A stretch of DNA of 64,000 nt from Macrostomum lignano (Eukaryota): assembly GCA_002269645.1 (NCBI GenBank), contig NIVC01003503.1, positions 1 through 64,000 on the forward strand, given 5' to 3'. Under the pieces are notes generated by a model, which saw nothing but the letters and a program-made list of their open reading frames with translations, was not told where the DNA came from and did not search any database. Shown in pieces: positions 3,276 through 57,196 of the stretch (positions are counted from its first letter, which is position 1; each line of letters opens with the position of its first letter). The translations under genes and the position numbers were made by a program.

Positions 3276-3309
3276 CAGGGACTACTCAAACATGTTTGAG
3301 TAGTCCCTG
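3276..3309. repeat. Perfect 34-bp palindrome with no spacer
   Basis: cagggactactcaaaca followed directly by tgtttgagtagtccctg. Confidence 0.95.
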
Positions 3310-3439
3310 GTAGTATGTTAGAAGGCTCAAAAGACGAAATCCTCTATCCTATGAACCACAAAAGTGCATATGCTAGTTTATATAAAGTTTTCTCAACTGA
3401 CTCAATCTCACGATCTCAATAATTTTTTACATTCTTTTA

Positions 3440-5408: not shown

Positions 5409-5718
5409 ATAACTATACTAAACAAATTTGTTAAAAAAGTTAATCGACTGCGGCTTTTTGATTCATCTCTAATTTGAACAGTTTACAGTGTTGCTCGTTG
5501 CTAATCGCGATTAAAAGTGAACGGTGAACATACTTTTCTGACAACAAGAATTTCTAATCACGAAAACGAAGAAAAAAGGAATATAATATGTACGGTTATT
5601 GTATTAATAAATATTTCGTAATAATTGGTAAGTTCGCAATTATTAGTAGTTATATCGCGACCAAAGTACGCCTGAGGCAATACTTAAGGGACAAAAAAGA
5701 ACAAAGAAACTTCATGGA

Positions 5719-22779: not shown

Positions 22780-24492
22780 TCAAGGCACGCTTGAGATGCT
22801 GCTGATGCTGAGGCTCTTAGTAGACTCTTTCGGCGGCAAGTGACTCTCTTCGCTGACTTTGAACTGCTGGATTGTAGAAACAGATGCCTGCTTGGAGCTT
22901 GACGCTCTTGCTTTCTTCCTGCCAAATAAGGCGATGTCGAAGATGAGCTCGAACAGCTCGCACAGGGTGAGCAGAGACATTCCCAGGTAGATGCCCATGA
23001 TGCCGCCGACGTCCGAGATGAAGTCCTGCAAACCGTAGTCCATCGAGAAGTTCATCCGATCGCACAGAACTCGATGCGGCTTGAAGTGCACTTTGAGCAT
23101 GTTGCTGCGGATGTATGAGGACACGATCGACTCGTTTCCGTTCACGACGAGGTCGAGAGCCGGAACACTCAGATTCTTAGACTTGGCCCTCATCCAAACA
23201 GGTTCGATGGAGCTGCTGACGAACGGCATCATTGAGCTCTGAGTGGGCCAGTCGGAACTGGAGATGGTCGCGCTGTACTGCAGTGTGCTGCAAAGTCGTT
23301 TAGCTTTACATGTCTCTTTCGATTTTACGTCGATCTGACTGGTGAGAGGTTCCAGAGATGGGTCGCTAAAAAATACCAAGAAGTTTGGATCACCTGTAAG
23401 GTTAAGTGCGAACTTCTTTCCACGCAGAGGCCACGGAAGAGGACCGGCATCGCTTGACAGATTGACGAGCTGCTGCATCTGTCGGTGGAACTCGTAGTAG
23501 AAGCAGTACGAGTAGCTGTACGAGTGCTTGTATGGAGTCTCGTCGTACGGGTTCACGAACTGAACGTCCGGCGGGTCGCTCAGACAGTCGAACTGACCAG
23601 CCTTGTACACCTGCTGCGTCATGTCGATCTCGACGGTGTGGGACTTTCCGGGTCCAAGCGAGAACGAGCTCACGAAGTCGGATGGATACTCACCTGGAGG
23701 CGTGAGGAACACTTTCACACCTGCTTGTCTGTCGGGTCCGTTGTAGTCGGCGACATTGAGCGACCAGTCGGACACAGGAATGGGAGTTCGTCTTGCGTAC
23801 ACCATCTTTTGGATCGAGTGTCCGCTCGATGCGAGTCCTTGAAACGACGAGTCCGTAACCAAGGTGACCACAATGCCGGATGATGAGCCGGTCTGTACGA
23901 TCTTTTGTTGCCACGTGCTGTACAGAGTCCACTTGAGACAGCGCAAGTACATCGGATGGTAGAAGGTCTGCGCTTTGATGGACACATATTCGGCCATTCC
24001 GTAACCTGTTTTAAACTTGAAGTCACTCGTGATGATGCTCTGTTCGTTTCGGTGAGCAAGCGCATCAATCAACAGCTGATATGATATTGACTGAGGATAG
24101 GCACGGGATAGTCTCATTTCTTGGGGTGTAGTTTCTGTTAATCCGTTTATTTGCAATCCCCGCCGTAGGACAGTCTGAGAGCTATTGAGCTGATCGTTGA
24201 TTGCAGCAGCCGATGCCTCATCAATAGTAGCAGAGTAGCTGCCAGAGATCGGGTTCTCGAAACAGGTGTACACATCCGGGAACTGGAAGTTGAGACTGTT
24301 TCCATCGACTGAGCTGGTGACCTGCCGAGACTGCAGCTTGACAACGAATCGGTAGAAACCATAGAAGAAAAGCCCCGACATCAGCAGCATCATTGTAAAC
24401 CAGAAAGCTCGCACAACCAGTGGTTTGCTGCTCACTACTCTGGGCAGTCCGTGCACTGATGTTGAAGCCATGGCTTCCTTAAATTGCTGCAT
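22780..24492 (-). CDS. DEG/ENaC channel subunit, copy 5 (intact, 570 aa, single exon)
   Basis: Uninterrupted ORF with all DEG/ENaC hallmark motifs. Confidence 0.95.
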   Translation of the reverse strand: MQQFKEAMASTSVHGLPRVVSSKPLVVRAFWFTMMLLMSGLFFYGFYRFVVKLQSRQVTSSVDGNSLNFQFPDVYTCFENPISGSYSATIDEASAAAINDQLNSSQTVLRRGLQINGLTETTPQEMRLSRAYPQSISYQLLIDALAHRNEQSIITSDFKFKTGYGMAEYVSIKAQTFYHPMYLRCLKWTLYSTWQQKIVQTGSSSGIVVTLVTDSSFQGLASSGHSIQKMVYARRTPIPVSDWSLNVADYNGPDRQAGVKVFLTPPGEYPSDFVSSFSLGPGKSHTVEIDMTQQVYKAGQFDCLSDPPDVQFVNPYDETPYKHSYSYSYCFYYEFHRQMQQLVNLSSDAGPLPWPLRGKKFALNLTGDPNFLVFFSDPSLEPLTSQIDVKSKETCKAKRLCSTLQYSATISSSDWPTQSSMMPFVSSSIEPVWMRAKSKNLSVPALDLVVNGNESIVSSYIRSNMLKVHFKPHRVLCDRMNFSMDYGLQDFISDVGGIMGIYLGMSLLTLCELFELIFDIALFGRKKARASSSKQASVSTIQQFKVSEESHLPPKESTKSLSISSISSVP

Positions 24493-27987: not shown

Positions 27988-29706
27988 TCAAGGCACGCTT
28001 GAGATGCTGCTGATGCTGAGGCTCTTAGTAGACTCTTTCGGCGGCAAGTGACTCTCTTCGCTGACTTTGAACTGCTGGATTGTAGAAACAGATGCCTGCT
28101 TGGAGCTTGATGCTCTTGCTTTCTTCCTGCCAAATAAGGCGATGTCGAAGATGAGCTCAAACAGCTCGCACAGGGTGAGCAGAGACATTCCCAGGTAGAT
28201 GCCCATGATGCCGCCGACGTCCGAGATGAAGTCCTGCAAACCGTAGTCGATCGAGAAGTTCATGCGATCGCACAGAACTCGATGCGGCTTGAAGTGTACT
28301 TTGAGCATGTTGCTGCGGATGTATGATGACACGATCGACTCGTTTCCGTTCACGACGAGGTCGAGAGCCGGAACACTCAGATTCTTAGAGTTGGCCCTCA
28401 TCCAAACAGGCTTGATGGAGCTGCTGACGAACGGCATCATTGAGCTCTGAGTGGGCCAGTCGGAACTGGAGATGGTCGCGCTGTACTGCAGAGTGGTGCA
28501 AGGTCGCTTAGCTTTGCACACAGCCTTTGTATTCTGGTCGATTTTTCCACTTTTGATTTGAAGCGATGGATCACGAAAGTAGATAAAGAAGTTTGGGTCA
28601 TCAGTAAGATTCATTACAAACTTCTTCCCACGAAGAGGCCAAGGAAGCGGTCCAATTATACCTGACATGTTGACGAGTTCTTGGTTCTGTCGGTGGAACT
28701 CGTAGTAGAAGCAGTACGAGTAACTGTACGAGTGCCGGTATGGAGTCTCGTCGTACGGGTTCACGAACTGAACGTCCGGCGGGTCGCTCAGACAGTCGAA
28801 CTGACCAGCCTTGTACACCTGCTGCGTCATGTCGATCTCGACGGTGTGGAATTTTCCGGGTCCCAGCGAGAACGAGCTCACGAAATCGGACGGATACTCA
28901 CCTGGAGGCGTGAGGAACACTTTCACACCTGCTTGTCTGTCGGGTCCGTTGTAGTCGGCGACATTGAGCGACCAGTCGGACACAGGAATGGGAGTTCGTC
29001 TTGCGTACACCATCTTTTGGATCGAGTGTCCGCTCGATGCGAGTCCTTGGAACGCCGAGTCCGTAACCAGGGTGACCACAATGCCGGATGATGAGCCGGT
29101 CTGTACGATCTTTTGTTGCCACGTGCTGTTCAGAGTCCACTTGAGACAGCGCAAGTACATCGGATGGTAGAAGATCTGCGCTTCGAGGGGCGCATATTCG
29201 GGCATTCCGTAGTCGGTGTTATAAGCGACATCGCTTGTGATGATATTCTGTTCGTTTCGGTGAGCCAGAGCGTCTATCAAGATTCTATAAGATATAGACT
29301 GAGGATGGGCAAGCGAGAACAACATCTCTGCTCCCATAAATGCGTTGCCGACGTACCCAAGCATTGAAAGCTCTCGTCTCATTACAACTTGCGAATCATT
29401 GAGCTGAGCATTGATTGCAGCAGCCGATGCCTCATCCACAGTCGCAGAGTAGCTTCCGGAGATCGGGTTCTCGTAGCAAGCGTACACATCCGGGAACTGG
29501 AAGTTGAGGCTGTTTCCATCGACCGAGCTGGTCACCTGACGAGTCTGCAGCTTGACAACGAAGTCGTAGAATCCTTTGAAGAATAGACCCGTCATTAGCA
29601 GCAGCACAGAGAGCCAAGCCAGTCGCACAGTGAGTGGTTTGCCACTTACAATCCTTGGCAGTCCGTGCGCTGTTGTGGACGTCATAGCATCAACGATTTG
29701 AAGCAT
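27988..29706 (-). CDS. DEG/ENaC channel subunit, copy 6 (intact, 572 aa, most divergent N-terminus)
   Basis: Uninterrupted ORF: STTAHGLPRIV, TM1, FPDVYACYEN, TM2 DVGGIMGIYLGMS. Confidence 0.95.
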   Translation of the reverse strand: MLQIVDAMTSTTAHGLPRIVSGKPLTVRLAWLSVLLLMTGLFFKGFYDFVVKLQTRQVTSSVDGNSLNFQFPDVYACYENPISGSYSATVDEASAAAINAQLNDSQVVMRRELSMLGYVGNAFMGAEMLFSLAHPQSISYRILIDALAHRNEQNIITSDVAYNTDYGMPEYAPLEAQIFYHPMYLRCLKWTLNSTWQQKIVQTGSSSGIVVTLVTDSAFQGLASSGHSIQKMVYARRTPIPVSDWSLNVADYNGPDRQAGVKVFLTPPGEYPSDFVSSFSLGPGKFHTVEIDMTQQVYKAGQFDCLSDPPDVQFVNPYDETPYRHSYSYSYCFYYEFHRQNQELVNMSGIIGPLPWPLRGKKFVMNLTDDPNFFIYFRDPSLQIKSGKIDQNTKAVCKAKRPCTTLQYSATISSSDWPTQSSMMPFVSSSIKPVWMRANSKNLSVPALDLVVNGNESIVSSYIRSNMLKVHFKPHRVLCDRMNFSIDYGLQDFISDVGGIMGIYLGMSLLTLCELFELIFDIALFGRKKARASSSKQASVSTIQQFKVSEESHLPPKESTKSLSISSISSVP

Positions 29707-30582: not shown

Positions 30583-31065
30583 CTGAGGATCAGAGAGTGT
30601 AAGTATTAAGTTTATGCTGGTATTTAAATGATTTTGAACTTTTAGATTGATTCCAGCTGGCATCTGATTTTAAATTTGGCATTCCGAGTCTGGACCAGGA
30701 TGCTAAAGGCATTGCGATTCCCAGCAAAAAACCCAGCTTTGCTCAGTCAGGCGCTCATGGATATTAGCCAAGTGTGCCTGTACACTCGACCTTCTGCTGA
30801 CAGCGAAAGAATCCACGTTCTGTTTAATCCTACTACGTGACGTGAGAAACAAACCCGGCGAAGATTTTCTTTAATCCGCACCGGGTGCTCTGCAATGATG
30901 ACGTTGTCTATCTGGCTCCTAGCGCAGTATACTCGTAGACTGTTGTGTTCATGAGCTGATAAATTGCATTATTTATTACACAACACAGATAAGAAAGTAA
31001 TTTTATCCCCTGCACTCATTCCAGATCACCAACTCCACACTGCAACATCCAGACAGTCCACTAAT

Positions 31066-31445
31066 ACTCCCCACACTCTAACATCACCAACACCCATACA
31101 GCCCTGTAAGTCTCCCCACACTCCAACATCACCAACACCCATACAGCCCTGTAAGTCTCCCCACACTCCAACATCACCAACACCCATACAGCCCTGTAAG
31201 TCTCCCCACACTCCAACATCACCAACACCCATACAGCCCTGTAAGTCTCCCCACACTCCAACATCACCAACACCCATACAGCCCTGTAAGTCTCCCCACA
31301 CTCCAACATCACCAACACCCATACAGCCCTGTAAGTCTCCCCACACTCCAACATCACCAACACCCATACAGCCCTGTAAGTCTCCCCACACTCCAACATC
31401 ACCAACACCCATACAGCCCTGTAAATCTCCCCACACTAACATCAA
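31066..31445. repeat. 45-bp minisatellite, ~8 units
   Basis: Unit tctccccacactccaacatcaccaacacccatacagccctgtaag, near-perfect copies. Confidence 0.97.
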
Positions 31446-31933
31446 CAGGATCCATACAGTCCACTAATATTCCCCACACTCCAACAAAAGCATGTTTTTC
31501 TATCTGGCTTCTAATCTAAAAGCAAGAATGCAGATTGTAAAAAATAATTTTACGAGAACTGCATGCAGCTGAATGCAAAGCTGAAGAAATTGCCGAGAGA
31601 AAAAGCAGGCAAACGGAGAAGCAGGAGCAGAAAAGCCACAAGCTACCCATTGTGCCACTGAGCAAACTTCAGCCCTGTTTATATTTGCTGCCTGCTAACA
31701 AAGGGAGATTGGCCGAGTGTGTATAACCCGTGTGCTCAGCCAGCCAGGAGTACTGCAGAACTGAACTAGTGCAGCCGAAACGAAAGACACTCGCGCGATG
31801 AAAAATTATTCTATATAACTGTGCAAATGCTCAAAAGTGAAAGCTCTAATCTGAATTTAATTGCTGCTGTTTCTGAGATAACTGCTAGCACCGATCTTTG
31901 CAATAAGTTTCTACAGTGCCATCAGTTATAGAA

Positions 31934-34900
31934 ATGGTGTTCATCACTGTCAAACACGGAGGTAAGAACCTGATCTATGGATATGTAGCGTAAGATTTAC
32001 AAAAAAAATTAAATGGCTTAATAGCTTCTGGAACTTCTTGGGGAGATTTGGTGAACCTGGTGCATGTACGCACCTGCGCTTGACAACATCAGTCGCAGGT
32101 GAAAGTGGTATGTCCATCAGCTATCTGACACAAAAAACATTGTTTAGTTACACGTAGTTCAATAAATGCTCTATTAAAACTGCAGCTAACGTGGAGACCC
32201 TGTTCAACCAGGACTGCAAGTGCGCAGCACTGCTACGGGCAATTCGTGACAAGTGCTGCAATTTTGGCTCAAGTGGTGAGCATTTTGAAAAAGACAATTT
32301 ACTTTATTGTATACGGGAAGACAAACCCGTTTCTATAGTAAAAATATCTTTTTGTGTGTAAAACTTAGGTAGCTTAATGGTTGGTTTTGTCACACAATGG
32401 TTGGTTTTGTCACACAATGGTTGATTTTGTTATAACAATGGTTGGTTTTGTCACACAATGATTGATTTTGTCACACAATGGTTGATTTTGTCACACAATG
32501 GTTGATTTTGTTACAAAATGGTTTATTGCACCGCTCAATGGTTGATTTTGTCACACAATGGTTGATTTTGTCACACAATGGTTGATTTTGTCACACAATG
32601 ATTGATTTTGTCACACAATGGTTGATTTTGTCATACAATGGTTGATTTTGTCACACAATGATTGATTTTGTCACACAATGGTTGATTTTGTCACACAATG
32701 GTTGATTTTGTTACAAAATGGTTTATTGCACCGCTCAATGGTTGATTTTGTCACATAGTGGTTGGTTTTGTCACACAATGGTTGATTTTGTCACACAATG
32801 GTTGATTTTGTTACAAAATGGTTTATTGCACCGCTCAATGGTTGATTTTGTCACACAATGGTTGATTTTGTTACAAAATGGTTTATTGCACCGCTCAATG
32901 GTTGATTTTGTCATACAATGGTTGATTTTGTCACACAATGGTTGATTTTGTCACACAATGATTGATTTTGTCACATAGTGGTTGGTTTTGTCACACAGTG
33001 GTTGATTTTATCACACAATGGTTGATTTTGTCACACAATGGTTGGTTTTGTCACACAATGGTTGCTTTTGTCACACAGTGCGGTAATTTTGTTCCTTTAT
33101 GGTTGCTTTCGTCACAAAATGATTGATTTCATCAACCATTGGTTCACATAGGAGCATAGCAGCTGGGCACGACCTAATACACATAGACTATTACTGTCAA
33201 TCTTTTTTACAGAAATAATAGATTTGTCCGACAAAGACGGAAACGTGAAGGATCTGAGAAAATATCCCAACATGACCGCAAAGGAGGTACTGGCTGACAG
33301 AGAGGACTGCGTCCTGATCAGAGTTGGAGGTAATCTTGCCTATGTTTTGAAGTCTTCAAAGTCAGGTTAAGTACTATATAACTATGGGAATTTGTACTTT
33401 TGGGGAGCTTTAAGGGACACATGGGTCAGTTCTAAGGGACACTGAGGTCAGGAGTTCCAGGGGACACTGAGGTCGGGAGTTCCAGGGGACACTGAGGTCG
33501 GGAGTTCCAGGGGACACTGAGGTCAGGAGTTCCAGGGGACACTGAGGTCAGGAGTTCCAGGGGACACTGAGGTCAGGAGTTCCAGGGGACACTGAGGTCA
33601 GGAGTTCCAGGGGACACTGAGGTCAGGAGTTCCAGGGGACACTGAGGTCAGGAGTTCCAGGGGACACTGAGGTCAGGAGTTCCAGGGGACACAGACTTTC
33701 AGCGCAATGTGTTTAGCAAAGACAAGGCCTCTTAGCGCTTCTAATATTCAACAAAGTATGCTTATAGTAAAGCTTTGGCTTTCAATTTGCAGAGAACAAT
33801 AAAGGAAGACTGGTTTACACTCCGTTACTAGACAATGAGGAGATTGTCACGAAAGCTTATCTGGGTAAGACGTTATATTTGTAAAAAAATAATTATGTAT
33901 CAGCTTACAAGTTGCTGCATCTCTCAGGGGCGTCGCCACCGAGGGGGGGGGACATGTTCCCCCGGTAAAAGTTATGGGAGTACATGTCAATATTTTGCCC
34001 GCCAACACCCCACCTTTGTTGACATATTATGGATATCAATACTTTCGCTTTAGGGCAACGAAGCATAGCGCTTGCGACGCTAAAATGAGTGTCTCCGGCG
34101 CTAAAATGAGTGCCTGTGGCGCTAAAATGAGTGCCTCCGGCGCTAAAATGAGTGCCTGTGGCGCTAAAATGAGTGCCTCCGGCGCTAAAATGAGTGCCTG
34201 CGGTGCTAAAATGAGTTCCTGTAGCGCTAAAATGAGTGCCTGCGGTGCTAAAATGAGTGCCTGTCGCGCTAAAATGAGTGCCTGCGGTGCTAAAATGAGT
34301 TCCTGTAGCGCTAAAATGAGTGCCTGCGGTGCTAAAATGAGTGCCTGTCGCGCTAAAATGAGTGCGTCGCGCTAAAATGAGTGCGTCGCGCTAAAATGAG
34401 TGCCTGTGGGGCTAAAATGAGTGCCTGCGGTACTAAAATGAGTGCCTGCGGTGCTAAAATGAGTGCCTGCGGTGCTAAAATGAGTGCCTCCGGCGCTAAA
34501 ATGAGTGCCTCCGGTGCTAAAATGAGTGCCTGTGGCGCTAAAATGAGTGCTTGTGGCGCTAAAATGAGTGCCTCCGGCGCTAAAATGAGTGCCTCCGGCG
34601 CTAAAATGAGTGCCTCCGGCGCTAAAATGAGTGCCTGCGACGCTAAATATGAGTGCCTCCGAAAATGCTTTTTTCGGAATGGAATTCGTCTAAAAATTGG
34701 AAAAGCAAGCAGTGTCAATATGTTTAAGGGTCAACTATGGTTACATTAAATTTGCAGCATTGTTTTCACGATATTTGAGCTAATCTTCACATAGACTACT
34801 GCCAAGTTTTTTAGCGTTTAAATGAATCCAGTCCATAGATTTTATATTCCCTATTGCGGCAATAGGGAAATAGCGATCACAGATAATGTGTAGACGCTAT

Positions 34901-48864: not shown

Positions 48865-49440
48865 TTAAAAAGTCCTGCAAGTTACGTTATTAAAAAGTGC
48901 AGAGAAATCTGGAGCATGCATTCAGTATTGCATTTCCTCGAAGTATTTCTCCTTCACTTCGATGTACCGTGTCATTCGCATTCGCCAAGCCTGAAAGCAG
49001 TTGAGGTACTCTGATGTGGGCTGTCTCTACAGTTCTGATTTGACTGCTCGTGTCAGATCCTAAATCCGAGAAAATAGCCTTCCAGAAATGGCAGTCCTAG
49101 ACTTAGTGAACAACCAGAAGTCGCTGGGTTCAAGGTATTGTGAGTAGGTTGGGTGAAGCAGCAGCTGAACTCCTGTCTGTTCCAAGAAGGCTCGAGTTTC
49201 AGTGCGGGGGGCCGCATTGTCGTGGTATAGCAGCAATCTGGCACTTCTCCGTTCTGGCACGCTGTCGCCTCTCCTAAAGCAAAACAGTCAGCAGTTTCCG
49301 TGTATACTTGGCAGTCACCGTGCTACGCTCAGGAAGAATTTCGACTGCTAACACCCTATGAGAGTTAAAGAAAACGATAAGCCTTGTCTTGCGTGGGCCG
49401 GCCTGGGTTTATCTTCGGTTTACCAGACCATGTTAGACTC
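48865..49440 (-). mobile_element. Decayed mariner, 3' half with one TIR
   Basis: LYHDNAAP...HPTYSQYLEPSDFWLF...DLTRAVKSEL*...FQAWRMRMTRYIEVKEKYFE. TIR-like tacggggcgattaaaaagt at ~48866. Confidence 0.8.
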
Positions 49441-52319
49441 CTCTTTCATCTTAAAGAAGGAAATCTAGCATTTGTCTCCTGTGACGTCAAAACCTTTGTC
49501 CAATAGATCGTCAGATAGAAGTAGCGATTAAACTTTTTGTCTTTCCTTTCCTTCTTCCGTAGCTCTGCTAGAGCGTCGAATGACTTTGTCTCAAAATTTT
49601 CAGGTAGTTTTTTGTTAGCAAGTAGATCGTACATGTAGCAGTGTCGTGCAGTTGCAGTTAAACAGACTGAACAGCATTAACATCAATCAGTCCAGACAAA
49701 TGTCCATGCCGTTTATTAAGTTGGCTTCGCATCGGACTGCTTTCGATTCTGTGCAAAGCCAAATTTGCAAAGAACCTAACTCACTTATAGCTTTGCTCCA
49801 TTCTTGCCGATCGCAATGAAGATGCTTGCTGTTGCTTGCTTGTGCGAAGTATATTAAGTCAATCCGTTAATAGCGGAGGCAAGTGACTTTATTGAAAAGC
49901 AAACGAAGCTGCTGCTGATAGCTGCCTCTCCCTCTGGTGTTCCTTTAAGAGCGTTGTCTTCTCCTTTTAAAATGATTGCTGCCTAGCCGGGTTAGCTTAG
50001 CAATGCGGTTAATCGACATGGCAAGCGCCCGGCCATGGCGGACCACCCTTTCAATGTGGGAGTTCAAGGTCAGCCTGAAGTCCAGGTTCATACCTAGGAA
50101 CCGGACTTCTTCTTGGTATTCAAGGCTCGTGCCGCCCAGGTTAAATTTGGGGCGCAGATCAAGCCGCCGGGTTGGCTTATAGTTAAACGCAATCACCTGA
50201 CTCTTGCCGGCATTGATCTTGATCCCCTGCCCCCCACACCAGTTCCAAACTTGGTCAAGGTAGGGTTGCAGGAGCGACTTGAGGCCAGCAAAAGAGTCCG
50301 CCGAGGCCCAGATGGCCATGTCGTCGGCGAATTGGCTGCGCTTAAGATTTGGATGTTGCGGCCTAGGCATAGTGCTGATCAAGAGCAGGTAGAGGAAGGG
50401 GCTCAGAATGCCGCCTTGGGGGACGCCCGCCTGCAGCTCGTACGGCTGGCTGAGCGCCCCGTTGACCTTCACCTGCATTAGCCTGTCTGCTAGATAGTCA
50501 GAGCAGATCCTGACGAGGGCGTCCGGCGTGTCGACTTCATGCATCCTGAACCTTAGGAAGTCATACCACACCGAGTCAAACGCCGCTTGTACGTCAAGGA
50601 GAATGGCCAGCAATCTTTTGAGTTTGGCTTTTCCAACCTGGACGTCTTGGACGAGACGGACAAGGTTGTCGTAGGTCGAGTGTACCTTCCTGTATGCGCA
50701 CTGATCCTCACCGAGGATGCCTTGGCCCTCAAGATGCTTCATCAGTCTCCTCACCAAAAGCTTTTCGAACACCTTGCCGAGGCAGGAGGTTAGACTGATG
50801 GGCCGATAGGATCCCGTGGATTCAGGCGGTTTTTTCAGGTTTGGGAATCATAGTCACCACCGCCTTTTTCCACTGCGATGGGAAGATCCCCATACGATAG
50901 CAATCGTTGAACAGTTTGGTGATGCGAGTAACCGCTATAGGCTACAGGCCATACTTCAGGACGCAGTTGGGAACTTTGTCCAGGCCCGGAGCACTGTCTA
51001 CCTTGAGATGGTCCAGTTCCCAGAGGGTATCTGTAACAGAGATAGGGGCCTCCAGGGGGTGGCCCATGTACGGTTCTGCGCTCGGTGGGACAGGTCTGAA
51101 GAGTGGGAGCTTCATAGTCTGCTCAATTTTTTTCTTCAGTCCATCATCCGTAGATGGAATCGGGCGCATTTTGGCATCTAAGGCTCTCGCAAGCATGTCA
51201 GCCTTATCAGAGTCTGTGTGTGCGAGGGTGGCGCCATCATTCAGGGACGGAATAGTGGTGCCCTTTTTGCGCCCCATCAATTTTTTTTGTGTCTTGCCAA
51301 AAGTCCTTGACATTCCGACGCTGACTTTTTTCAACTATTTTCTCGCACAATTGGGTGAATTGGCCCTGCTCAAACGAATGAATGGCGCTTTTTATTTCCT
51401 TCGCCTTTCTATTCGCGAGGAGCCTGAAGTTGTCGTCCCTGGTGCTAAGGTACAGACGCCGGAGCTTTCTTCTCTCCTTGATCATAGCAATGATCCTCTG
51501 GGGGAGGGTTCTACGGCTATTTCTGACCGGGACGTTTTCCTCGATAGTCTTCTGGATCGCACCGGTGATGAAGTCGACCTCCGCATCAATTTGCTGCCTG
51601 GTTCTAAGGTCTGGAGGCCATGCATCAATCATCTTTTCCATAAGGATATTTTGGAACTCCTCCCAGTTGGCTTTAGCAAAATTTCGAGCCTTCTCTGGCC
51701 CTTGCCAGTCTGGGGAGTTACTTGCCAGGGTAAGAATAATTGAAAGGTGATCGCTATTCAGGTCGTCACCCACTTTTTAAGTCCTGGATGTAGGGGACGA
51801 GGTCGCTGGAGGCCAGACCTAGGTCCAGCACATTCCGGGAGACCGTTCCTTGTCGATGGGCTATTCTGGTGAACTGACCTGGTTGGTTTAGAACGGTGGG
51901 ACGGTTTGCAGGGTCGCCACAGAGCCAGTCATGAAGCTGTTGGCCAGCCCTGTTATTGCGACTCTCGCCTCCCAAGAAATTGTGCCTGGCGTTGAGGTCA
52001 CCCATAATAAGAGAGTATTTGGCCGAACACAGCCGAGTCAAAAGACCGACATTAAGGTTGTCCGGCGATGGAGACCGATAGATCAAGGCCAGTTTGAAAG
52101 CAGGGCAAGCGCCGTCAAGAGGGGTGACTGTGCAGGTAAGAACCTCATGGTTGATGTTGTCGTACGAGAGCTGGACATCAGCTACCTTAACCCGTGGGGT
52201 GTGTACGAGGAGGAGTCCGCGCTTCGTACTTGGAAGGTCAAACCGCACTGCAGCATAGCCCGGAAATGTGCATACTTGGGTATTTTTCAGGATGGTCTCA
52301 GAGAACAACGCTATATCTA

Positions 52320-54104
52320 CGAGGGGTGTCCCAAAAGTTCCCGGAATGTCTAACGTAGCTCTTCAACAGAGCCATGAAATTTCACGCCCATGGTGTCAAA
52401 TGAAAGGAAATTTTGTCACAAAGAATACAAAGTTAAAATCATGTTGATATCTTTTTTTATTCAAGAGCTACAGCAAGAAACTTGCGCAAAGGTCAGGGGT
52501 AGTGTTACACAACCTCAACAATCTATGACAATGATTTTAAACAATAAAACACAGAACAGTTCATACCGTTGATGAAATGGGTGCCGATGATGGGCATGAA
52601 CCAATTCAAAATTCAAAGCGAATCGTCAAGCTCAACCTGCGGCTTCTCCACGTAGTCCCCATTCAGCTGGACACACCTCTGCCACCTTGAAAGCATGCCG
52701 TCGATGGCCTGGGCAAAAACAGTTCGAGGCATTTCATGCAGGATGACGCGACGAGTGAAGTCTTCAAGTTCACTGCGGTTCTGGAACACCCGGCCACGAA
52801 GAAGTTTTTTAATTTGTGGAAAGATGGCAAAATCGGCAGGGGCCAAGTCTGGCGAGTAGGGCGGGTGAGGCACCAACTCAAAATTCAGCTGGTTGATCTG
52901 CGCCATCGTCTTTCTAGCGGTGTGTGGCCGAGCATTGTCATGGTGCAAAAAGCAGGGCTTCTCACCAGAATGACGCCGCTTGTTTCTCACATCATCCTTT
53001 AGTCTGGCCAGGCTAGCAACGTAGCGATCAGCATTGATGGTGGTCCCTTCCTCCAGAAAATCAATGGTCAGTGGACCACAGTGGTCAAAGAAGAGAGTCA
53101 GCATGACTTTTTTCGAATGCTGGTCTCGCCGAGCCTTCACAGGGGCAGGTGACCCTTTCTTTGTCCAAACCCGGCTTTCTTCTTTTGTCTCAGGATCAAA
53201 AAACGGAATCCAGGTCTCGTCACCAGAAATGATCAGCTTACCGAAGTCGCTCCAGCCACCTTGCCTCTGAATGAGCTCAATGTTGGACTTGGCGACGCTC
53301 AGTCGTTGTGCCCTGAGCTCCGGTGTGAGGAGACGGGGAACCCAGCGGGCTGAGATCTTTGAGAGAACCAGATCGTTGACGATTATTCGATGGACAGTCG
53401 ACTTGGCAATATCCAATTGATCAGAGATCTCTCGAATAGTCAAGCGGGCATCCGAGTCCAGCAGGGCCTCGATCCGTTGATGGGATGTCTCTCCACCCGA
53501 CGTGCAAGGACGGCCAGAGCGTGGCTGATCATTCACAGCAGACTGGCCATCTCTAAAGCGTTCGATCCATCCGTAAATTGCAGTTTTTTTCAGGCCGTTC
53601 TCACCGTGGATGGAGAATAAGTGGTCAGAAATCTTGGCTCCACTCCATCCTACTGACCAAAGGGCAAAAACTTGAATTCGCTGACTTTCAAGGCTCAGAA
53701 GAGAACTCATTTTCGCAAAAAAATTTCAAGTTGAAAGCAAGCGCTTGGTACGAATTATCTGCACTCGCGCAAAAGCTCAGATTAGCTTTATGAGCATTTC
53801 TGCTTTTTCCATAGACACTACCACGTCTTTCTAACACGTCAGTAGCACGAATTCAAAATGATAAAATTCCAAAAATGGAGATGAAAAAATTATTGCCATA
53901 GATTGTTGAGGTTGTGTAACACTACCCCTGACCTTTGCGCAAGTTTCTTGCTGTAGCTCTTGAATAAAAAAAGATATCAACATGATTTTAACTTTGTATT
54001 CTTTGTGACAAAGTTTCCTTTCATTTGACACCATGGGCGTGAAATTTCATGGCTCTGTTGAAGAGCTACGTTAGACATTCCGGGAACTTTTGGGACACCC
54101 CTCG
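52320..54104 (-). mobile_element. Complete mariner transposon with 213-bp TIRs and TA TSD
   Basis: TIRs at 52320-52532 and 53892-54104 differ at two positions. TA at 52318-19 and 54105-06. Removing the element rejoins the LINE endonuclease codons GAC CAG AAA CTA GAT ATA GCG. Confidence 0.97.
52613..53710 (-). CDS. Mariner DD34D transposase (intact, 365 aa)
   Basis: WVPRLL, GDETW, HHDNARPH, YSPDLAPAD; 34 residues between the second and third Asp. Confidence 0.97.
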   Translation of the reverse strand: MSSLLSLESQRIQVFALWSVGWSGAKISDHLFSIHGENGLKKTAIYGWIERFRDGQSAVNDQPRSGRPCTSGGETSHQRIEALLDSDARLTIREISDQLDIAKSTVHRIIVNDLVLSKISARWVPRLLTPELRAQRLSVAKSNIELIQRQGGWSDFGKLIISGDETWIPFFDPETKEESRVWTKKGSPAPVKARRDQHSKKVMLTLFFDHCGPLTIDFLEEGTTINADRYVASLARLKDDVRNKRRHSGEKPCFLHHDNARPHTARKTMAQINQLNFELVPHPPYSPDLAPADFAIFPQIKKLLRGRVFQNRSELEDFTRRVILHEMPRTVFAQAIDGMLSRWQRCVQLNGDYVEKPQVELDDSL

Positions 54105-54250
54105 TAGTTTCTGGTCTGAGACCCAGAGCCTGAGTTCTTTTAATTTCGGTATTATTCCCCTGCAATTCAGGTGGGCGATCTTGAGCCCTGAGGCAGTGGG
54201 GTTGGAGCTATCGTGCCCGTTATTACCGATCATTACTAATTTCATTCATT

Positions 54251-57196
54251 CTAGGTCTGGCCATCCACCTGTCGCCGGGGGGCGCCAAGCAGCTGACCAA
54301 GACCTTGGTGACCTTCCGACCCTCCTGCAAGGGCCCGGGCCAGAACCCTACCTACTACATCTTGCAGCGTTTGACCGGTGCCTTCAGTAGTATGCGGCCG
54401 TTCGGCCTGGCTCGGCAAGAGGACCGTAAGCACCTCTACGAGCGCTTGAACTAGCTTGGGAAAGAGCCCACTCACCATAGCTTCCATGGCGGCGAGCATG
54501 TTAGGCAGCACGTCATTACTTGGCGGCGGATCACTTGGCAACTGCGTCTGGGTCACAGAGTCAACCGAGTCGCGCACAGGGCGCTTTCGACTAGGGAGGC
54601 CGGGGCCGGTTAGCCAGGACGAGTCGTCGTCGGTGCCCCCCGTAGCCGTTGTCGCCCGTGCAGCGGTCTCGATTGGTCTAGGCGCAGTCACCGGAGCTGA
54701 TCGCGGTGCGGGGGCGGGTGGCGCTGCTGCTGCTGCTGCCATCGCCTGCGCTTCTGTTGGTGCAGCTCGCTCAGTCGCTGCAGTTGCTAATACTGGTGGC
54801 GGAGCTGCTGCTTGCATTATTGCCGCGGCTTCCCTGGCGCCGGCTTGATAGGCTGCAGCGCGCCGGGCCGCCTGGCTGTGCTTTTCAGCAGCTACTGGGC
54901 AGTTCCTGTAGTTTGCTCAATGGGCCTCGCCACAATTTGCGCATTTGGCCACGTCCGGGTTCGGGCACTCTTTCCAGCGGTGCGCCGCCGCGCAGATGTT
55001 GCAGCGCGGAGCAGCACGACACCGATTCGCGCGGTGGCCGAACCGCTGGCACTTATGGCACTGGAGCGCCCTAGCCGGAGCAGCCGTCTTGCTTGGTTCG
55101 CAGGCATATCTCGTGAACTGCGTTATGATGCCTGTCGCCAGGCAAGCATCCGCAGTGGCTTTATTAGGTAAGAATAGGCGGACGAGGTGAGTCGGCTCAT
55201 TACGCGCTCGCGACGTGATGCGACTCGCAGAGATAACTTTCAAACCTACGTCCTCCCGCAGGTGCTGAATGAATGCCGGAATCTCAATCTCGACCGGCAC
55301 ACCCCCCGGACTACTACAGAGTGCACCGATCGGACTGGAGGTGGCCGGTGAGCGGGTCTGTTGTACATTGGTCTGGAATTGGGCAGTCTACGCTTGACTG
55401 GTACGCCGTTCATGTTTGGCTCCCTCAGCGGCCCTCGGAGAAAGATCTGATGGTCTCTGGGTGTCGCTGGGAAAACCAGGTAGCCGTTCTTAGAACTGAT
55501 TGGCCTGGTCAGCGTTGCTCGGGCGTTGCCCTGAAAGTTGGACGCCAGCCATTTAAGGAAGTTAATTTGGTCACATTTTGTGTCACCGTCGAAGTTGAAG
55601 ACGACTGGCACTACGTTCTGCAGGCCTGGTGCAGCATTATTACTATTGTTGTTCCTTGCTGATTATTAATATTACAATTTTGACCCGCAGCCGACGCATA
55701 TGAGCGCCCTTGGATGATAGGCCGTTGAGCTGCGCCACCGCGCCCCGCACCAACATTGCCGCTTTGGTCTTGTACTTGGTTGCGGGAACTGCCAAGCGCA
55801 GCAGGGCCGGGCGCGCCGGCCGCCCCACGTAGCAGGACCGGAGTCCGCCCCGCCTCTGCCAGGCCCATCCCCGACGGGTGCTGCTGCCGCTGTCGTGCCT
55901 CCGTGCCCCGGTGTGCCGACGCCAGGTGGATGAGTCACCCTAAAGTTGAGTGATATACGTACACCCTCCTGGACGCCGACTCCTGGGACACTGTGCTTGC
56001 ACTTTCTTTGACAGGCCCCTGACATAATAATTACAGAGCCTGGTTTGGTTTACAGAGCCTACCACACGTTGGGTGACATTCTCCTTCACCAAGAACTGAC
56101 GGACGGCGCCTAGGGAGACCGTAGCAATATAAGGGTCTCTATCGAGTTCCGGCTCGTTATCCGCATGGTAGGGTATATGGTCGTCTGCCGTTTCATAGAA
56201 GTTGATTAGGCAGCTATTAAACTTTGGTGCATTAATATTGGCATTGAATTCTAGATAGTCCCGCATGTCCTCCACCGCCGGATGCCATTTCAGATTGGCG
56301 CCGAGGGGGACACCGGAGTATGAGTAGTCCGGACCAAACCATACGACACGGCGTTGCTCGTGCGGCCTATGATGCACGGCGATTGGCAGGAGATCTTTAA
56401 TCAGCCTGTCGTAGATGTCCGATGCTACACTGCCTAGCAAGTTGGGATAGTACTCTAGGCGGACATCTTGGCTAAGCAGCTTGATTGTCGATCCAGATTT
56501 GTCCGCGCCTCTTAGAAAAGCAATTGGATTGACATATGGCATGTTGCTATTTTCCGCGTCCAGGTCAACATTGTCATCACGTGCCGAATCTGCCACAGAG
56601 GCAGAATCAGATTCGATAGCTGCTGCGGCTGCGCTGGGGTCTTTGGAGCCGGCTTGGCCAGCCCCTTCCAGCACAGGGACAGAGCCGCTATCTGACGTAT
56701 TCGATCTGGCACTGTCCGGTGACCCGTGCTGCTCTGCCGTGATGGCGAGGACCGGAGACTTTGGTATTGTGGACGCATTAATGCAGCTTGGTTGCTCTGC
56801 AGGTACTTCGGCTAGATTTGGCACTGAAGCCGGCGTTGCTACATCTGCCTTTTCCCTGGGAGATGGTGGCGTATCAGATGGCGGTGCTAGTGCGCAGTCC
56901 ATACCTGCCGGGCAGCTAAGGGCTGCTAGGCTGTACGGAGCATCCGGCGAGATGCTCTCGGCACTGCTTCTGGAGGCCCTGTTGCTGTTGGGCTCCTTAC
57001 TGACCACACCAGTATCACCAGAGGTAGTTGCGGCGCCAGAAGGACCGGCGGGCAGCCGTACTGGTTTTTTGCCTAGGCCTAGCAGATTTCGGCCAAAGGC
57101 CTCCATCTTGTCGACCGATGATCGATTGTCGACTCGCTTGGCCGCAGGAAGGCCGGAAGGTTTAGCAATTTTGGTAGGCGGGACCTGTTTGCTCAT
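54251..57196 (-). pseudogene. LINE ORF1 (~980 aa if repaired): low-complexity N-terminus, AlkB dioxygenase, linker, zinc-knuckle Gag-like region
   Basis: ORFs 55940..57196, 55672..56025, 55611..55868, 55246..55611, 54917..55300 and 54251..54817 tile the region. They can be joined by about four 1-2-nt indels plus one in-frame TGA at 54917. Knuckles: CHKCQRFGHRANRC, CNICAAAHRWKEC, CANCGEAH*ANYRNC. Confidence 0.75.
55939..56470 (-). other. AlkB-family 2OG-Fe(II) dioxygenase domain (ALKBH2/3-like)
   Basis: YSYSG...W; FNSCLINFY; HADNE (HxD); IATVSLGAVRQF; after one frameshift at ~56050, GSVIIMSGACQ..KHSVP (distal His) and RISLNFR (R-x5-R). Confidence 0.93.

What the first reader, a model, noticed from the sequence alone, without database searches (positions are those of the whole stretch)
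54251..57196. LINE retrotransposon whose ORF1 carries its own AlkB nucleic-acid demethylase domain
Seen in sequence: an AlkB-type domain with every catalytic motif present (N-x-Y in INFY, HxD in HADNE, distal His in KHSVP, R-x5-R in RISLNFR). It lies on the same strand, with no introns or poly(A) signal, between a short 5' UTR and the SYASAA / VVRGVP / 3x zinc-knuckle region of a Jockey/I-like ORF1, followed by APE-RT ORF2. About four 1-2-nt indels and one stop separate the pieces from a single ~980-aa ORF1. Established: ALKBH2/3-type enzymes remove m1A and m3C, which block reverse transcriptases. AlkB domains are embedded in the replicases of several plant RNA virus families (Alpha-/Betaflexiviridae, Closteroviridae). 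LINE ORF1 proteins coat the element RNA and are known to pick up extra domains (PHD, esterase). Inference: the element may bring an RNA repair or demethylation enzyme into its own ribonucleoprotein, protecting the template from alkylation damage or countering a methylation-based host defence. I know of no characterised LINE-borne AlkB, but cannot exclude an existing Repbase or Dfam entry.
Basis: partly seen in the sequence, partly recalled or inferred. Interest (0 to 1): 0.92.

Follow-up and report, generated by a model that had tools for sequence, protein, structure and literature searches.

The report
LINE retrotransposon with built-in AlkB demethylase
A dead copy of a jumping gene (a LINE retrotransposon) whose RNA-coating protein carries its own ALKBH3-like nucleic-acid demethylase; intact relatives in the flatworm Macrostomum lignano and in other sequencing samples show that the fusion is real, conserved and apparently undescribed.

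Summary
On the minus strand, 57196→54251 is a ~981-codon LINE ORF1 broken by at least four frameshifts and one stop. It reads: disordered N-terminus, AlkB domain with every catalytic motif, linker, two RRM-like domains, three CCHC knuckles and a helical tail. An APE-RT ORF2 follows. It is split by a mariner insertion with TA duplications and has lost its 3' end.

The AlkB domain is not a neighbouring host gene. Uninterrupted ORF1 proteins of 757-962 aa with the same domain order exist in Logan assemblies, with a collinear 861-aa gene model in Macrostomum lignano. APE-RT or APE follows ORF1 in three loci from different families. The domain is ALKBH3-like: phmmer 7e-19 for the window domain, and Foldseek TM 0.87-0.90 for an intact relative. 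Its non-synonymous divergence (dN 0.24-0.29) matches the RRM1 and knuckle domains and is far below the linker (~0.7).

AlkB domains also turned up in a restriction-like-endonuclease non-LTR polyprotein and next to a Penelope-like element.

The likely function, which is inferred, is removal of RT-blocking m1A/m3C from the element's own RNA or cDNA within its RNP. The only published retrotransposon AlkB I found is in an orchid Gypsy LTR element. This is a new variant of a known kind. This copy is dead and the biochemistry is untested.

The parts
54251..57196 (-). Complete but disabled LINE ORF1 (~981 codons): N-terminal disordered region, AlkB domain, linker, RRM1, RRM2, three CCHC knuckles, helical tail. 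The stop codon (TAG) is at 54253-54251.
   Evidence: Three-frame translation and piece mapping. Collinear alignment with intact relatives. tblastn of M. lignano and Logan ORF1s against the window.
55924..56452 (-). AlkB (ALKBH3-like Fe(II)/2-oxoglutarate dioxygenase) domain, split by a frameshift near 56040. Motifs: N-x-Y 56218-56195, HxD 56167-56159, distal His in KHSVP 55998-55984, R-x5-R 55959-55939.
   Evidence: Pfam PF13532 at 1.1e-13. PDB phmmer: ALKBH3 6.7e-19, ALKBH2 6e-11. Motif coordinates. These residues are invariant across the family.
56545..57196 (-). N-terminal S/A/P-rich, probably disordered part of ORF1, starting at ATG 57196. One short motif (AFGRNLLGLG) looks by eye like the M. 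lignano family's AYGRQLLGLT, but BLAST found no significant match here.
   Evidence: sequences compared by eye; tblastn found no significant match in this part. Low identity elsewhere in this region.
55615..55923 (-). Low-complexity G/A/P-rich linker containing the RSYASAAG motif (55706-55683). It holds two of the frameshifts (~55848 and ~55614), or alternatively three in-frame stops.
55300..55614 (-). RRM1-like domain (VVPVVFNFDG...FLKWLASNF...), followed by a short spacer up to HSVVVRGV. A frameshift lies at ~55298.
   Evidence: Alignment with relatives. The AlphaFold model of relative P0004 shows a beta-alpha-beta-beta-alpha-beta domain with pLDDT ~90-95 at the homologous position.
54920..55297 (-). 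RRM2-like domain plus three CCHC zinc knuckles (55060-55019, 55003-54965, 54943-54920), followed by an in-frame TGA at 54919-54917.
   Evidence: Pfam zf-CCHC is weak (0.008, below the cut-off). Motif positions. Alignment. Model.
54254..54916 (-). C-terminal A/P-rich tail of ORF1, ending in a conserved helical segment.
   Evidence: Alignment. C-terminal helices in the model of P0004.
54107..54245 (-). Start of ORF2 (MKLVMIG...LKIAHLNCRG...WVSDQ), the N-terminus of the APE endonuclease, cut by the mariner insertion. The 54107 boundary is inferred from the TA duplication.
   Evidence: tblastn of M. lignano ORF2 residues 2-24. Coordinates.
52320..54104 (-). Secondary insertion, not part of the LINE: a 1,785-bp mariner-type DNA transposon. 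It has ~222-bp terminal inverted repeats (98.6% identical), TA target-site duplications at 52318-52319 and 54105-54106, and an uninterrupted 365-aa transposase ORF (53710→52613).
   Evidence: Self-blastn. Pfam Transposase_1 and DDE_3. Ends read directly.
49966..52319 (-). Remainder of ORF2: APE endonuclease and reverse transcriptase (FADD at 50331-50320), with three frameshifts. It is truncated after the position matching residue ~806 of the 926-aa M. lignano ORF2. The C-terminal ~120 codons and the 3' UTR are absent from the window.
   Evidence: Pfam Exo_endo_phos_2. tblastn at 49-61% identity to M. lignano ORF2. Failed search for the C-terminus and 3' UTR.

Best explanation
The window holds a decayed copy of an APE-type non-LTR retrotransposon (LINE). 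In this family the AlkB domain is an integral, vertically inherited part of ORF1p, the protein that coats the element's RNA.

The full ORF1p reads: disordered N-terminus, ALKBH3-like Fe(II)/2-oxoglutarate dioxygenase, flexible linker, two RRMs, three CCHC knuckles and a helical tail. That is a 'type I' (Jockey/I-like) ORF1 with an enzyme added at the N-terminus.

Proposed mechanism (inferred):
- ORF1p binds the RNA that encoded it, so each ribonucleoprotein carries many tethered copies of an oxidative demethylase.
- That enzyme removes base methylations on the Watson-Crick face (m1A, m3C and possibly m1G), which stall reverse transcriptases or make them misincorporate.
- It would act on the template RNA and perhaps on single-stranded cDNA or target DNA.
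- This would raise the yield of full-length, faithful insertions.

Shown here: the architecture, its conservation, the ALKBH3-like fold, retention of all catalytic residues, and purifying selection.

Inferred: catalytic activity, the substrate, and the benefit to retrotransposition.

The copy in the window itself is dead: it has frameshifts, a stop codon, a mariner insertion and a missing 3' end.
For: Architecture in the window.

Same domain order in uninterrupted ORFs:
- 757-962 aa in four diverged Logan families (P0002, P0004, P0011, P0013).
- A collinear but gapped 861-aa M. lignano gene model, P0155.

RT machinery downstream of ORF1:
- L001: ORF1 of 843 aa, then a 948-aa ORF2 with APE and RVT_1 at 3e-39.
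- L003: APE directly after ORF1.
- M. lignano L004: at least three head-to-tail copies with a 926-aa APE-RT ORF2. One copy reads in a single frame from mid-AlkB to the ORF1 stop.

Window and M. lignano elements are homologous throughout. The RT is 68% identical at nucleotide level and ORF2 is 49-61% identical at amino-acid level. Their AlkB domains pair in 199 of 200 NJ bootstraps.

Subfamily:
- The window's frame-repaired domain, by phmmer: ALKBH3 7e-19 against ALKBH2 6e-11.
- The intact relative P0004, by AlphaFold model: AlkB domain at pLDDT >90, matching human ALKBH3 bound to ssDNA or 3mC at TM 0.87-0.90. ALKBH2 scores 0.77-0.85, E. coli AlkB ~0.62 and ALKBH5 0.60.

Constraint:
- HxD, distal His, R-x5-R and N-x-Y are invariant in all family members.
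- AlkB is the best-conserved ORF1 region: mean identity 42%, against 35-41% for RRM and CCHC and ~20% for the linker and tail.
- Between intact families, dN in AlkB is 0.24 and 0.29. RRM1 and the knuckles give 0.22-0.28, RRM2 0.24-0.43, and the linker 0.69-0.72. Synonymous sites are saturated. Where dN/dS could be computed (one pair) it is about 0.08.

Background (established knowledge, not tested here): ALKBH3 and AlkB demethylate m1A and m3C in ssDNA and RNA, and these lesions block reverse transcriptases. AlkB treatment is used in the laboratory for exactly this purpose in tRNA sequencing. AlkB domains in flexivirus replicases repair RNA.
Against: - No enzymatic or retrotransposition data exist for any member.
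- The window copy is non-functional, so nothing here shows current activity in this genome.
- Copy number in the source genome is unknown. Only one copy lies in the window.
- The residue after HxD is Asn in the window (HADNE) rather than the Asp found in most members (HSDDE). In E. coli AlkB the equivalent Asp135 helps recognise the exocyclic amine of m1A and m3C, so specificity may differ. This Asn recurs in P0008 and P0076, so it is a natural variant and not decay.
- Clade support for a single origin of the LINE AlkBs is weak (75 of 200 NJ bootstraps).
- The organisms behind the Logan runs are unidentified.
Confidence: 0.62

Rival explanations
1. Epitranscriptomic counter-defence or regulation rather than damage repair. 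On this reading the ORF1p-borne AlkB erases marks that the host writes deliberately on the element's RNA (m6A, or enzymatically installed m1A or m3C), marks that would otherwise trigger decay, silencing or translational repression. This is the role proposed for the orchid Gypsy AlkB.
For: The orchid Ty3/Gypsy AlkB is an active m6A demethylase in vitro, and its authors propose it counters epitranscriptomic surveillance (PMC9289625). m6A affects L1 and ERV fate in mammals (papers listed). Strong constraint on the domain fits this reading as well as it fits repair.
Against: The domain is ALKBH3/ALKBH2-like, not ALKBH5- or FTO-like. Foldseek TM is 0.87-0.90 against 0.60 for ALKBH5, and no ALKBH5 or FTO chain passed E<0.01 by sequence. 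By established knowledge the ALKBH2/3 group is specialised for m1A and m3C rather than m6A.
Confidence: 0.2
2. DNA-directed role. The AlkB acts on single-stranded DNA at the integration site or on the nascent cDNA. Alternatively it repairs 3mC that DNA methyltransferases introduce as a by-product on heavily methylated transposon DNA.
For: The best structural matches are ALKBH3 complexes with ssDNA and 3mC. M. lignano is reported to retain DNMT1 and DNMT3 together with ALKB2, and DNMTs generate 3mC as an off-target product (PMC9246332).
Against: The domain is fused to the RNA-binding ORF1p and not to ORF2p, which is the protein that works at the DNA target. Methylation patterns in free-living flatworms are unknown.
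Confidence: 0.12
3. These are domesticated host genes derived from a LINE ORF1 fused to AlkB, not components of mobile elements.
For: M. lignano gene models are annotated as ordinary proteins ('Fe2OG dioxygenase domain-containing protein').
Against: APE-RT or APE follows ORF1 on the same strand in all three loci that extend far enough, each from a different family. M. lignano has near-identical multi-copy arrays. Several diverged families coexist in the same samples. The window copy is decaying like a neutral TE insertion and has itself been hit by a mariner.
Confidence: 0.03
4. Chance juxtaposition: the AlkB segment is a host gene fragment or retrocopy that merely lies next to a 5'-truncated LINE in this window.
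For: In the window alone the AlkB part and the RRM/CCHC part are in different frames.
Against: Uninterrupted fusion ORFs exist in four Logan families, with a collinear gapped gene model in M. lignano, and they share as little as 32-43% identity in the AlkB domain. The frameshift repair within AlkB is confirmed by the closest relative, P0008, which reads straight through (...TPGSVIVMAGACQRKCEHSVP...).
Confidence: 0.01

Closest known systems
Type I ORF1 proteins of Jockey/I/CR1/L2-group LINEs (RRM(s) plus CCHC knuckles; subtype IB has 2 RRM and 3 CCHC, and subtype IC adds an N-terminal PHD finger)
   Same: It has two RRM-like domains followed by three CCHC knuckles, sits upstream of an APE-RT ORF2, and carries an extra domain at the N-terminal side, where the PHD finger sits in subtype IC (PMC4120745).
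   Different: The extra domain is a ~190-aa enzyme (an AlkB dioxygenase). The accessory domains listed in the surveys I could read are PHD, esterase, coiled coil and transposase-22, with no AlkB among them. The exact RT clade of the element was not determined.
Human ALKBH3 (and ALKBH2), the m1A/m3C oxidative demethylases of ssDNA/RNA and dsDNA
   Same: Same fold (TM 0.87-0.90 to ALKBH3 and 0.77-0.85 to ALKBH2 for the intact relative P0004, at ~30% identity) and the same HxD...H, R-x5-R and N-x-Y motifs.
   Different: It is embedded in a retrotransposon RNA-binding protein instead of being a free-standing host repair enzyme. The N-terminal part of the fold is shorter: Pfam matches start at profile position ~39-47 in most members. 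In the window subfamily Asp is replaced by Asn after the HxD. Activity is untested.
AlkB-type ORF of Phalaenopsis orchid Ty3/Gypsy (Tat/Ogre-like) LTR retrotransposons (PMC9289625)
   Same: A retrotransposon that encodes its own AlkB-family demethylase. It is the only published retrotransposon case I found.
   Different: It is a plant LTR element, not an animal non-LTR element. The AlkB lies in a separate ORF2, not fused to the RNA-packaging protein. It is described as ALKBH5-like with m6A demethylase activity, whereas the domain here is ALKBH3-like.
AlkB domains inside the replicase polyproteins of plant RNA viruses (Alpha-/Betaflexiviridae, Closteroviridae) — from established knowledge, not tested here
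   Same: A selfish RNA-templated replicator carries an AlkB domain that is thought to keep its own RNA free of m1A and m3C.
   Different: These are RNA viruses with an RNA-dependent RNA polymerase, and the domain sits within the replicase. No direct sequence comparison with viral AlkBs was made here.

Membership tests
AlkB family, ALKBH2/3 subgroup of Fe(II)/2-oxoglutarate dioxygenases | Significant match to the AlkB-type 2OG-Fe(II) oxygenase profile | tested here: met
   PF13532 at 1.1e-13 for the window fragment, and 1e-28 to 1e-31 for intact relatives.
AlkB family, ALKBH2/3 subgroup of Fe(II)/2-oxoglutarate dioxygenases | Iron-binding triad HxD...H and 2OG-binding R-x5-R plus N-x-Y | tested here: met
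   HAD 56167-56159, His in KHSVP 55998-55984, RISLNFR 55959-55939, NSCLINFY 56218-56195. All are invariant in the family alignment.
AlkB family, ALKBH2/3 subgroup of Fe(II)/2-oxoglutarate dioxygenases | Double-stranded beta-helix fold closest to ALKBH3/ALKBH2 rather than to ALKBH5, FTO, ALKBH1, ALKBH6 or ALKBH8 | tested here: met
   Tested on the intact relative P0004, not on the broken window copy. Foldseek: ALKBH3 TM 0.87-0.90; ALKBH2 0.77-0.85; E. coli AlkB ~0.62; ALKBH6 0.63-0.67; ALKBH5 0.60. The window sequence by phmmer: ALKBH3 7e-19, ALKBH2 6e-11.
AlkB family, ALKBH2/3 subgroup of Fe(II)/2-oxoglutarate dioxygenases | Oxidative demethylation of m1A/m3C in nucleic acid | not testable with these tools
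   Needs a biochemical assay on a protein from an intact copy.
APE-type non-LTR retrotransposon (LINE) | ORF2 with an N-terminal apurinic-like endonuclease followed by a reverse transcriptase with Y/FxDD | tested here: met
   Window: Exo_endo_phos_2 at 3.5e-7, RT homology, and FADD at 50331. Relatives: APE plus RVT_1 at 3e-39 and 2e-36.
APE-type non-LTR retrotransposon (LINE) | ORF1 upstream on the same strand encoding a nucleic-acid-binding protein | tested here: met
   RRM-like domains and CCHC knuckles. The ORF1 stop is at 54251 and the ORF2 ATG at 54245.
APE-type non-LTR retrotransposon (LINE) | Multiple dispersed or arrayed copies in a genome | tested here: inconclusive
   Met for relatives: at least three copies in M. 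lignano L004 at 99.3-99.6% identity, and identical ORF1s in several Logan runs. Only one copy lies in this window, and the rest of the source genome was not available.
APE-type non-LTR retrotransposon (LINE) | Defined 3' end (poly(A) or short-repeat tail) and target-site duplication | tested here: not met
   The 3' end of the window copy is missing, so no tail or TSD can be seen. M. lignano units end in ...TTTTAACAACAA and abut the next unit directly. This reflects decay of this copy, not evidence against the family.
Type I ORF1p (Khazina & Weichenrieder classification; Jockey/I-like) | At least one RRM plus C-terminal CCHC zinc knuckle(s) | tested here: met
   Two beta-alpha-beta-beta-alpha(-beta) domains at pLDDT 85-95 and three CX2CX4HX4C knuckles in the model and alignment. 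Pfam zf-CCHC: 3e-4 in P0011, and 0.008 (below the cut-off) in the window. No RRM profile hit was obtained, so the RRM assignment rests on predicted topology only.
Specific RT clade (Jockey vs I vs CR1 vs L2 etc.) | Placement in an RT phylogeny with reference elements | not tested
   No Repbase or RTclass1 reference set was available. PDB hits (L1 ORF2p 7e-18, R2 2e-16) do not discriminate. No RNase H domain was detected by Pfam in ORF2 of the relatives.

The most novel reading that the evidence does not exclude
Base methylation of retroelement RNA or cDNA (m1A/m3C-type lesions or marks) is a general, previously unappreciated barrier to reverse transcription-based mobility in some animals. Retroelements have answered it repeatedly by capturing ALKBH3-like demethylases. 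My data show AlkB domains in three mechanistically different retroelement classes: (i) an APE-type LINE, fused to ORF1p (this family); (ii) an RLE-type non-LTR polyprotein (P0070); and (iii) an ORF placed immediately upstream of a Penelope-like RT-GIY-YIG gene (L005). If the enzyme is active and needed for transposition, this would be the first enzymatic 'template-repair or anti-modification' module described in LINE ORF1 proteins.
Probability: 0.4. Interest if true: 0.88.

Novelty: new variant of a known kind. Interest (0 to 1): 0.78.

Why it matters
LINE ORF1 proteins are regarded as RNA chaperones and packaging proteins. The only accessory enzymatic domain described for them so far is an esterase of unclear role.

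An ORF1p with a conserved, constrained ALKBH3-like demethylase implies that chemical modification of the template matters enough for retrotransposition to maintain a repair or eraser enzyme inside the RNP. This parallels AlkB domains in plant RNA viruses and in one orchid LTR element.

It gives a directly testable system. M. lignano is transgenesis-competent and carries near-identical copies, so one can ask whether m1A, m3C or other base methylation restricts reverse transcription in vivo.

There is also a practical warning. TE-borne AlkB copies are annotated as ordinary 'Fe2OG dioxygenase' proteins in M. lignano. They could confound presence/absence surveys of ALKB2/ALKBH3, such as those that correlate ALKB2 with DNMTs.

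Tried and rejected
- Two word-indexed protein searches found nothing: the full repaired ORF1 and the repaired AlkB domain. Low-complexity words probably saturated the candidates in the first, and few candidates (169) shared words in the second. The exhaustive HMMER search then found the family.
- A profile search with the trimmed family alignment recovered only one family member (P0030) plus ordinary ~200-aa AlkBs. It is therefore useless for a census.
- Exact-sequence look-ups of window ORFs all failed: the AlkB ORF, the mariner transposase, and the tandem 550-572-aa genes. The source organism remains unidentified. It is not demonstrably M. lignano, since the RT is only 68% identical at nucleotide level to the M. 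lignano family.
- No second copy or fragment of the element lies in the window.
- The search for the missing ORF2 C-terminus and 3' UTR elsewhere in the window failed.
- The search for 5' UTR similarity to define the 5' end failed.
- The NJ tree of 45 AlkB domains groups the LINE AlkBs together, with the Penelope-associated AlkB nearby. Bootstrap support is weak (75 and 39 of 200) and the donor lineage is unresolved. No support was found for a sister relation to the M. lignano host-type AlkB P0010 or to human ALKBH3. A first bootstrap attempt timed out.
- dN/dS proper is unreliable because synonymous sites are saturated (pS 0.6-0.8). I used relative dN between domains instead.
- PDB sequence hits of ORF2 do not resolve the LINE clade.


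Full report
**1. What is in the window**

The feature lies on the minus strand. A three-frame translation of 57500→54100 and mapping of the pieces give one long coding region, 57196→54251 (981 codons). It is broken by frameshifts near 56040, 55848, 55614 and 55298, and by a TGA at 54919-54917. The two linker shifts could instead be read as one frame with three stops.

The first 418-aa ORF contains an AlkB-type domain (Pfam 2OG-FeII_Oxy_2, 1.1e-13). The frameshift at ~56040 cuts this domain. The next frame continues with ...PGSVIIMSGACQRKCKHSVP...RISLNFR. All catalytic motifs are present:
- N-x-Y at 56218-56195.
- HxD at 56167-56159.
- Distal His at 55998-55984.
- R-x5-R at 55959-55939.

The repaired 209-aa domain matches human ALKBH3 at 6.7e-19 and ALKBH2 at 6e-11.

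Downstream come a G/A/P-rich linker with RSYASAAG, a VVPVVFNFDG...FLKWLASNF domain, the HSVVVRGVP... domain, three CCHC knuckles and an A/P-rich tail.

ORF2 starts at 54245, a few bases after the ORF1 stop. Its APE N-terminus is cut by a 1,785-bp mariner (52320-54104; ~222-bp inverted repeats, TA duplications, intact 365-aa transposase). It then resumes through APE and RT (FADD at 50331) to 49966, with three more frameshifts. The last ~120 codons of ORF2 and the 3' UTR are not in the window. The copy is dead.

**2. Is the AlkB part of the element?**

This was the decisive question. An exhaustive HMMER search of 1.84 billion representative proteins with the 418-aa ORF returned ordinary ~200-aa AlkBs. 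It also returned a set of much longer top hits.

Their sequences and a multiple alignment with the window's conceptual ORF1 show complete collinearity: AlkB, linker, P(V/I)(I/L)F(E/D)...F(E/Q)R(F/W)L..NFP domain, a second RRM-like domain, three CCHC knuckles and a conserved helical C-terminus. P0002 (962 aa), P0004 (757 aa), P0011 (892 aa) and P0013 (843 aa) carry this as uninterrupted proteins. The M. lignano gene model P0155 (861 aa) is collinear but lacks part of RRM2 and two knuckles.

The contigs that encode them show the rest of a LINE:
- L001 has ORF1 (843 aa), a 123-aa ORF, then a 948-aa ORF2 with APE and RVT_1 at 3e-39.
- L003 has APE directly after ORF1.

In M. lignano (NIVC01002892.1; L004) at least three head-to-tail units of 6,457 bp, 99.3-99.6% identical, each carry AlkB-ORF1 and a 926-aa APE-RT ORF2. 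One unit reads in a single frame from mid-AlkB through the RRMs and knuckles to the stop, and another reads from the ATG through the whole AlkB domain (P0001).

The window element is homologous to this M. lignano family throughout:
- RT: 68% nucleotide identity.
- ORF2: 49-61% amino-acid identity.
- ORF1: 32-53% amino-acid identity.

The closest AlkB fragment, P0008 (67% identity over the matched stretch; a UniParc record whose accession lies in the same range as the M. lignano entries), reads straight through the position of the window's frameshift, which confirms the repair. The 'adjacent host gene or retrocopy' alternative is refuted.

**3. What kind of AlkB, and is it maintained?**

An AlphaFold model of the intact relative P0004, built on a 31-sequence alignment, gives the following:
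- AlkB domain, residues 1-225, at pLDDT >90.
- Two beta-alpha-beta-beta-alpha(-beta) RRM-like domains (310-386 and 410-480) at pLDDT 85-95.
- Knuckles at moderate confidence.
- Two C-terminal helices, and disordered linkers.

Foldseek against the PDB ranks the matches as follows:

| Structure | TM (target-normalised) |
|---|---|
| Human ALKBH3 bound to ssDNA or 3mC-ssDNA | 0.87-0.90 (rmsd ~2 Å, 31% identity) |
| ALKBH2 | 0.77-0.85 |
| ALKBH6 | 0.63-0.67 |
| E. coli AlkB | ~0.62 |
| ALKBH5 | 0.60 |

The HxD...H triad, R-x5-R and N-x-Y are invariant across the family.

AlkB is the most conserved part of ORF1:

| Region | Mean pairwise identity |
|---|---|
| AlkB | 42% |
| CCHC | 41% |
| RRM1 | 37% |
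| RRM2 | 35% |
| Linker, tail, N-terminus | 18-22% |

Codon comparisons between intact families (P0004 with P0002, and P0013 with P0011) give the following:

| Region | dN |
|---|---|
| AlkB | 0.24 and 0.29 |
| RRM1 and knuckles | 0.22-0.28 |
| RRM2 | 0.24 and 0.43 |
| Linker | 0.69-0.72 |

Synonymous sites are saturated. Where it could be computed (P0004/P0002), dN/dS in AlkB is about 0.08. The enzyme domain is therefore at least as constrained as the canonical RNA-binding modules.

The window subfamily has Asn instead of Asp after HxD (HADNE). The same variant occurs in P0008 and P0076, so it is not a decay lesion. By analogy with E. coli AlkB Asp135, it may modulate substrate choice (inference).

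**4. How it most likely works**

ORF1 proteins of this type bind the RNA that encoded them and form the retrotransposition RNP (established knowledge). A flexible linker tethers the AlkB domain to the RRM and knuckle modules. Each RNP would thus carry many copies of an ALKBH3-like oxidative demethylase.

ALKBH3-type enzymes remove m1A and m3C from single-stranded nucleic acids, and these modifications stall or derail reverse transcriptases (established knowledge). My best explanation is in-RNP removal of RT-blocking base methylation from the template RNA, and possibly from ssDNA intermediates. This would favour complete and accurate target-primed reverse transcription.

The architecture, fold, catalytic residues and selection are shown here. 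The activity, the substrate and the benefit are inferred.

The rivals are:
- Erasure of host-installed regulatory or defensive marks. This is less likely for m6A, given the ALKBH3-like rather than ALKBH5/FTO-like fold.
- A DNA-directed role, for example on DNMT-generated 3mC. M. lignano is reported to retain DNMT1/3 and ALKB2 (PMC9246332).

**5. Comparison with what is known**

Searches of open-access full text returned one retrotransposon case. These searches combined AlkB with non-LTR, ORF1, LINE or Penelope terms, 2OG-FeII with retrotransposon, Macrostomum with AlkB, and dioxygenase with ORF1.

The case is a Phalaenopsis Ty3/Gypsy LTR element with a separate ORF encoding an ALKBH5-like m6A demethylase (PMC9289625). 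A survey of ORF1 domains in the Jockey/CR1/L2 superfamily lists RRM, CCHC, PHD, esterase, coiled-coil and transposase-22 domains but no AlkB (PMC4120745).

Members of the present family sit in UniProt and GenBank as uncharacterised 'Fe2OG dioxygenase domain-containing protein' of M. lignano. Repbase and Dfam could not be queried.

I therefore rate it a new variant of a known kind: a type I LINE ORF1 with a new enzymatic accessory domain. It is functionally analogous to AlkB in plant RNA viruses and in the orchid Gypsy element. The exact RT clade is undetermined, and no RNase H domain was detected.

**6. Wider pattern seen in passing**

Among the same hit list:
- P0070 (1,843 aa, from a JGI metagenome) is a single polyprotein. 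It has an N-terminal AlkB, RVT_1 (2e-28), and a C-terminal CX2C...H...C motif followed by an RPD...D.K restriction-like endonuclease signature. That makes it an R2/NeSL-type non-LTR element.
- On contig L005, a 1,012-aa AlkB-containing ORF lies 384 bp upstream of a Penelope-like RT-GIY-YIG ORF.
- P0076 joins an unidentified N-terminal domain to AlkB on short contigs.

All of these keep the catalytic motifs. The NJ tree groups the LINE AlkBs and places the Penelope-linked one nearby, but support is weak. AlkB capture by retroelements may therefore be recurrent, or may have spread between element classes.

**7. Verdict**

The function is plausible but untested, and this particular copy is a fossil. 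Interest is 0.78. The main caveats are:
- The source organism and the organisms behind the Logan runs are unidentified.
- No genome-wide census was possible.
- Repbase and Dfam were not checked.
- Deep phylogenetic resolution is weak.

Noticed in passing
window 52320-54104 (TA duplications at 52318-52319 and 54105-54106): An apparently intact mariner-type DNA transposon sits inside the LINE ORF2. It has ~222-bp terminal inverted repeats (98.6% identical), an uninterrupted 365-aa transposase with HTH and DDE domains, and a perfect TA target-site duplication. It looks young and possibly active.
   Followed up: partly
L005 (Logan SRR19430222 contig) 2120-5158 and 5542-7398: A 1,012-aa ORF with a central AlkB domain lies 384 bp upstream, on the same strand, of a Penelope-like element ORF. 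That ORF has RT motifs (RPIVS, DVSSLYT, GTAMG, YIDD) plus GIY-YIG. This puts an AlkB in a second retroelement class.
   Followed up: partly
P0070 (JGI/IMG metagenome protein, 1,843 aa; contig 6,466 bp): A single polyprotein with N-terminal AlkB (126-273), RVT_1 (1104-1353), and a C-terminal CCHC motif (1655) followed by an RPD...D.K restriction-like endonuclease signature. It is an R2/NeSL-type non-LTR element carrying AlkB.
   Followed up: partly
L004 (M. lignano NIVC01002892.1:86081-107289), units starting at 2531, 8988 and 15439: The AlkB-LINE forms a direct head-to-tail array of at least three 6,457-bp units, 99.3-99.6% identical. They are joined ...TTTTAACAACAA|AGATTTCCGTGG... with no poly(A) and no spacer. 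A satellite with a ~16-bp period lies just upstream (1093-1921). I did not resolve whether this reflects self-targeted insertion, unequal crossing-over or an assembly artefact.
   Followed up: partly
L001 4346-4717; L013 3269-3643; L014 3177-3551: A conserved 123-124-aa ORF with no Pfam match sits between ORF1 and ORF2 in the P0011 and P0013 families. It has no tblastn match in the window, and no comparable inter-ORF frame appears in the M. lignano ORF list.
   Followed up: no
P0076 (Logan ERR12380052 and ERR13065125; L006, L007): A 383-aa protein joins an unidentified ~220-aa N-terminal domain to an AlkB domain with the same HADNE variant as the window. The contigs are too short to show context.
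   Followed up: partly
M. lignano proteins P0010/P0173 and P0038/P0170-P0172: M. lignano also has host-type AlkB genes: an ALKBH3-like protein and a C2H2-zinc-finger-AlkB fusion. Because TE-borne AlkBs are numerous and annotated as ordinary proteins, surveys that score ALKB2/ALKBH3 presence in flatworms could be confounded.
   Followed up: no
window 5799-29706, minus strand: A tandem array of intronless paralogous ORFs, some intact and some degraded. The intact ones are 550-572 aa (18434-20086, 22780-24492, 27988-29706). They have an N-terminal and a C-terminal hydrophobic segment and a large Cys-containing middle region, which resembles a DEG/ENaC-type channel layout. They were not searched, and exact-sequence look-ups found nothing.
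   Followed up: no
window ~49150-49500, minus strand: A fragment of a second, unrelated mariner/Tc1-like transposase (…LYHDNAAPRT…HPTYSQYLEPSDFWLF…) lies immediately 3' of the point where the LINE ORF2 breaks off. It may be connected with the loss of the LINE 3' end.
   Followed up: no
window 30964-31467 and 33974-34375: Long coding-looking tandem repeats: a PTSPTPIQPCKSPHT unit and a GAKMSAC unit. These are probably minisatellites.
   Followed up: no
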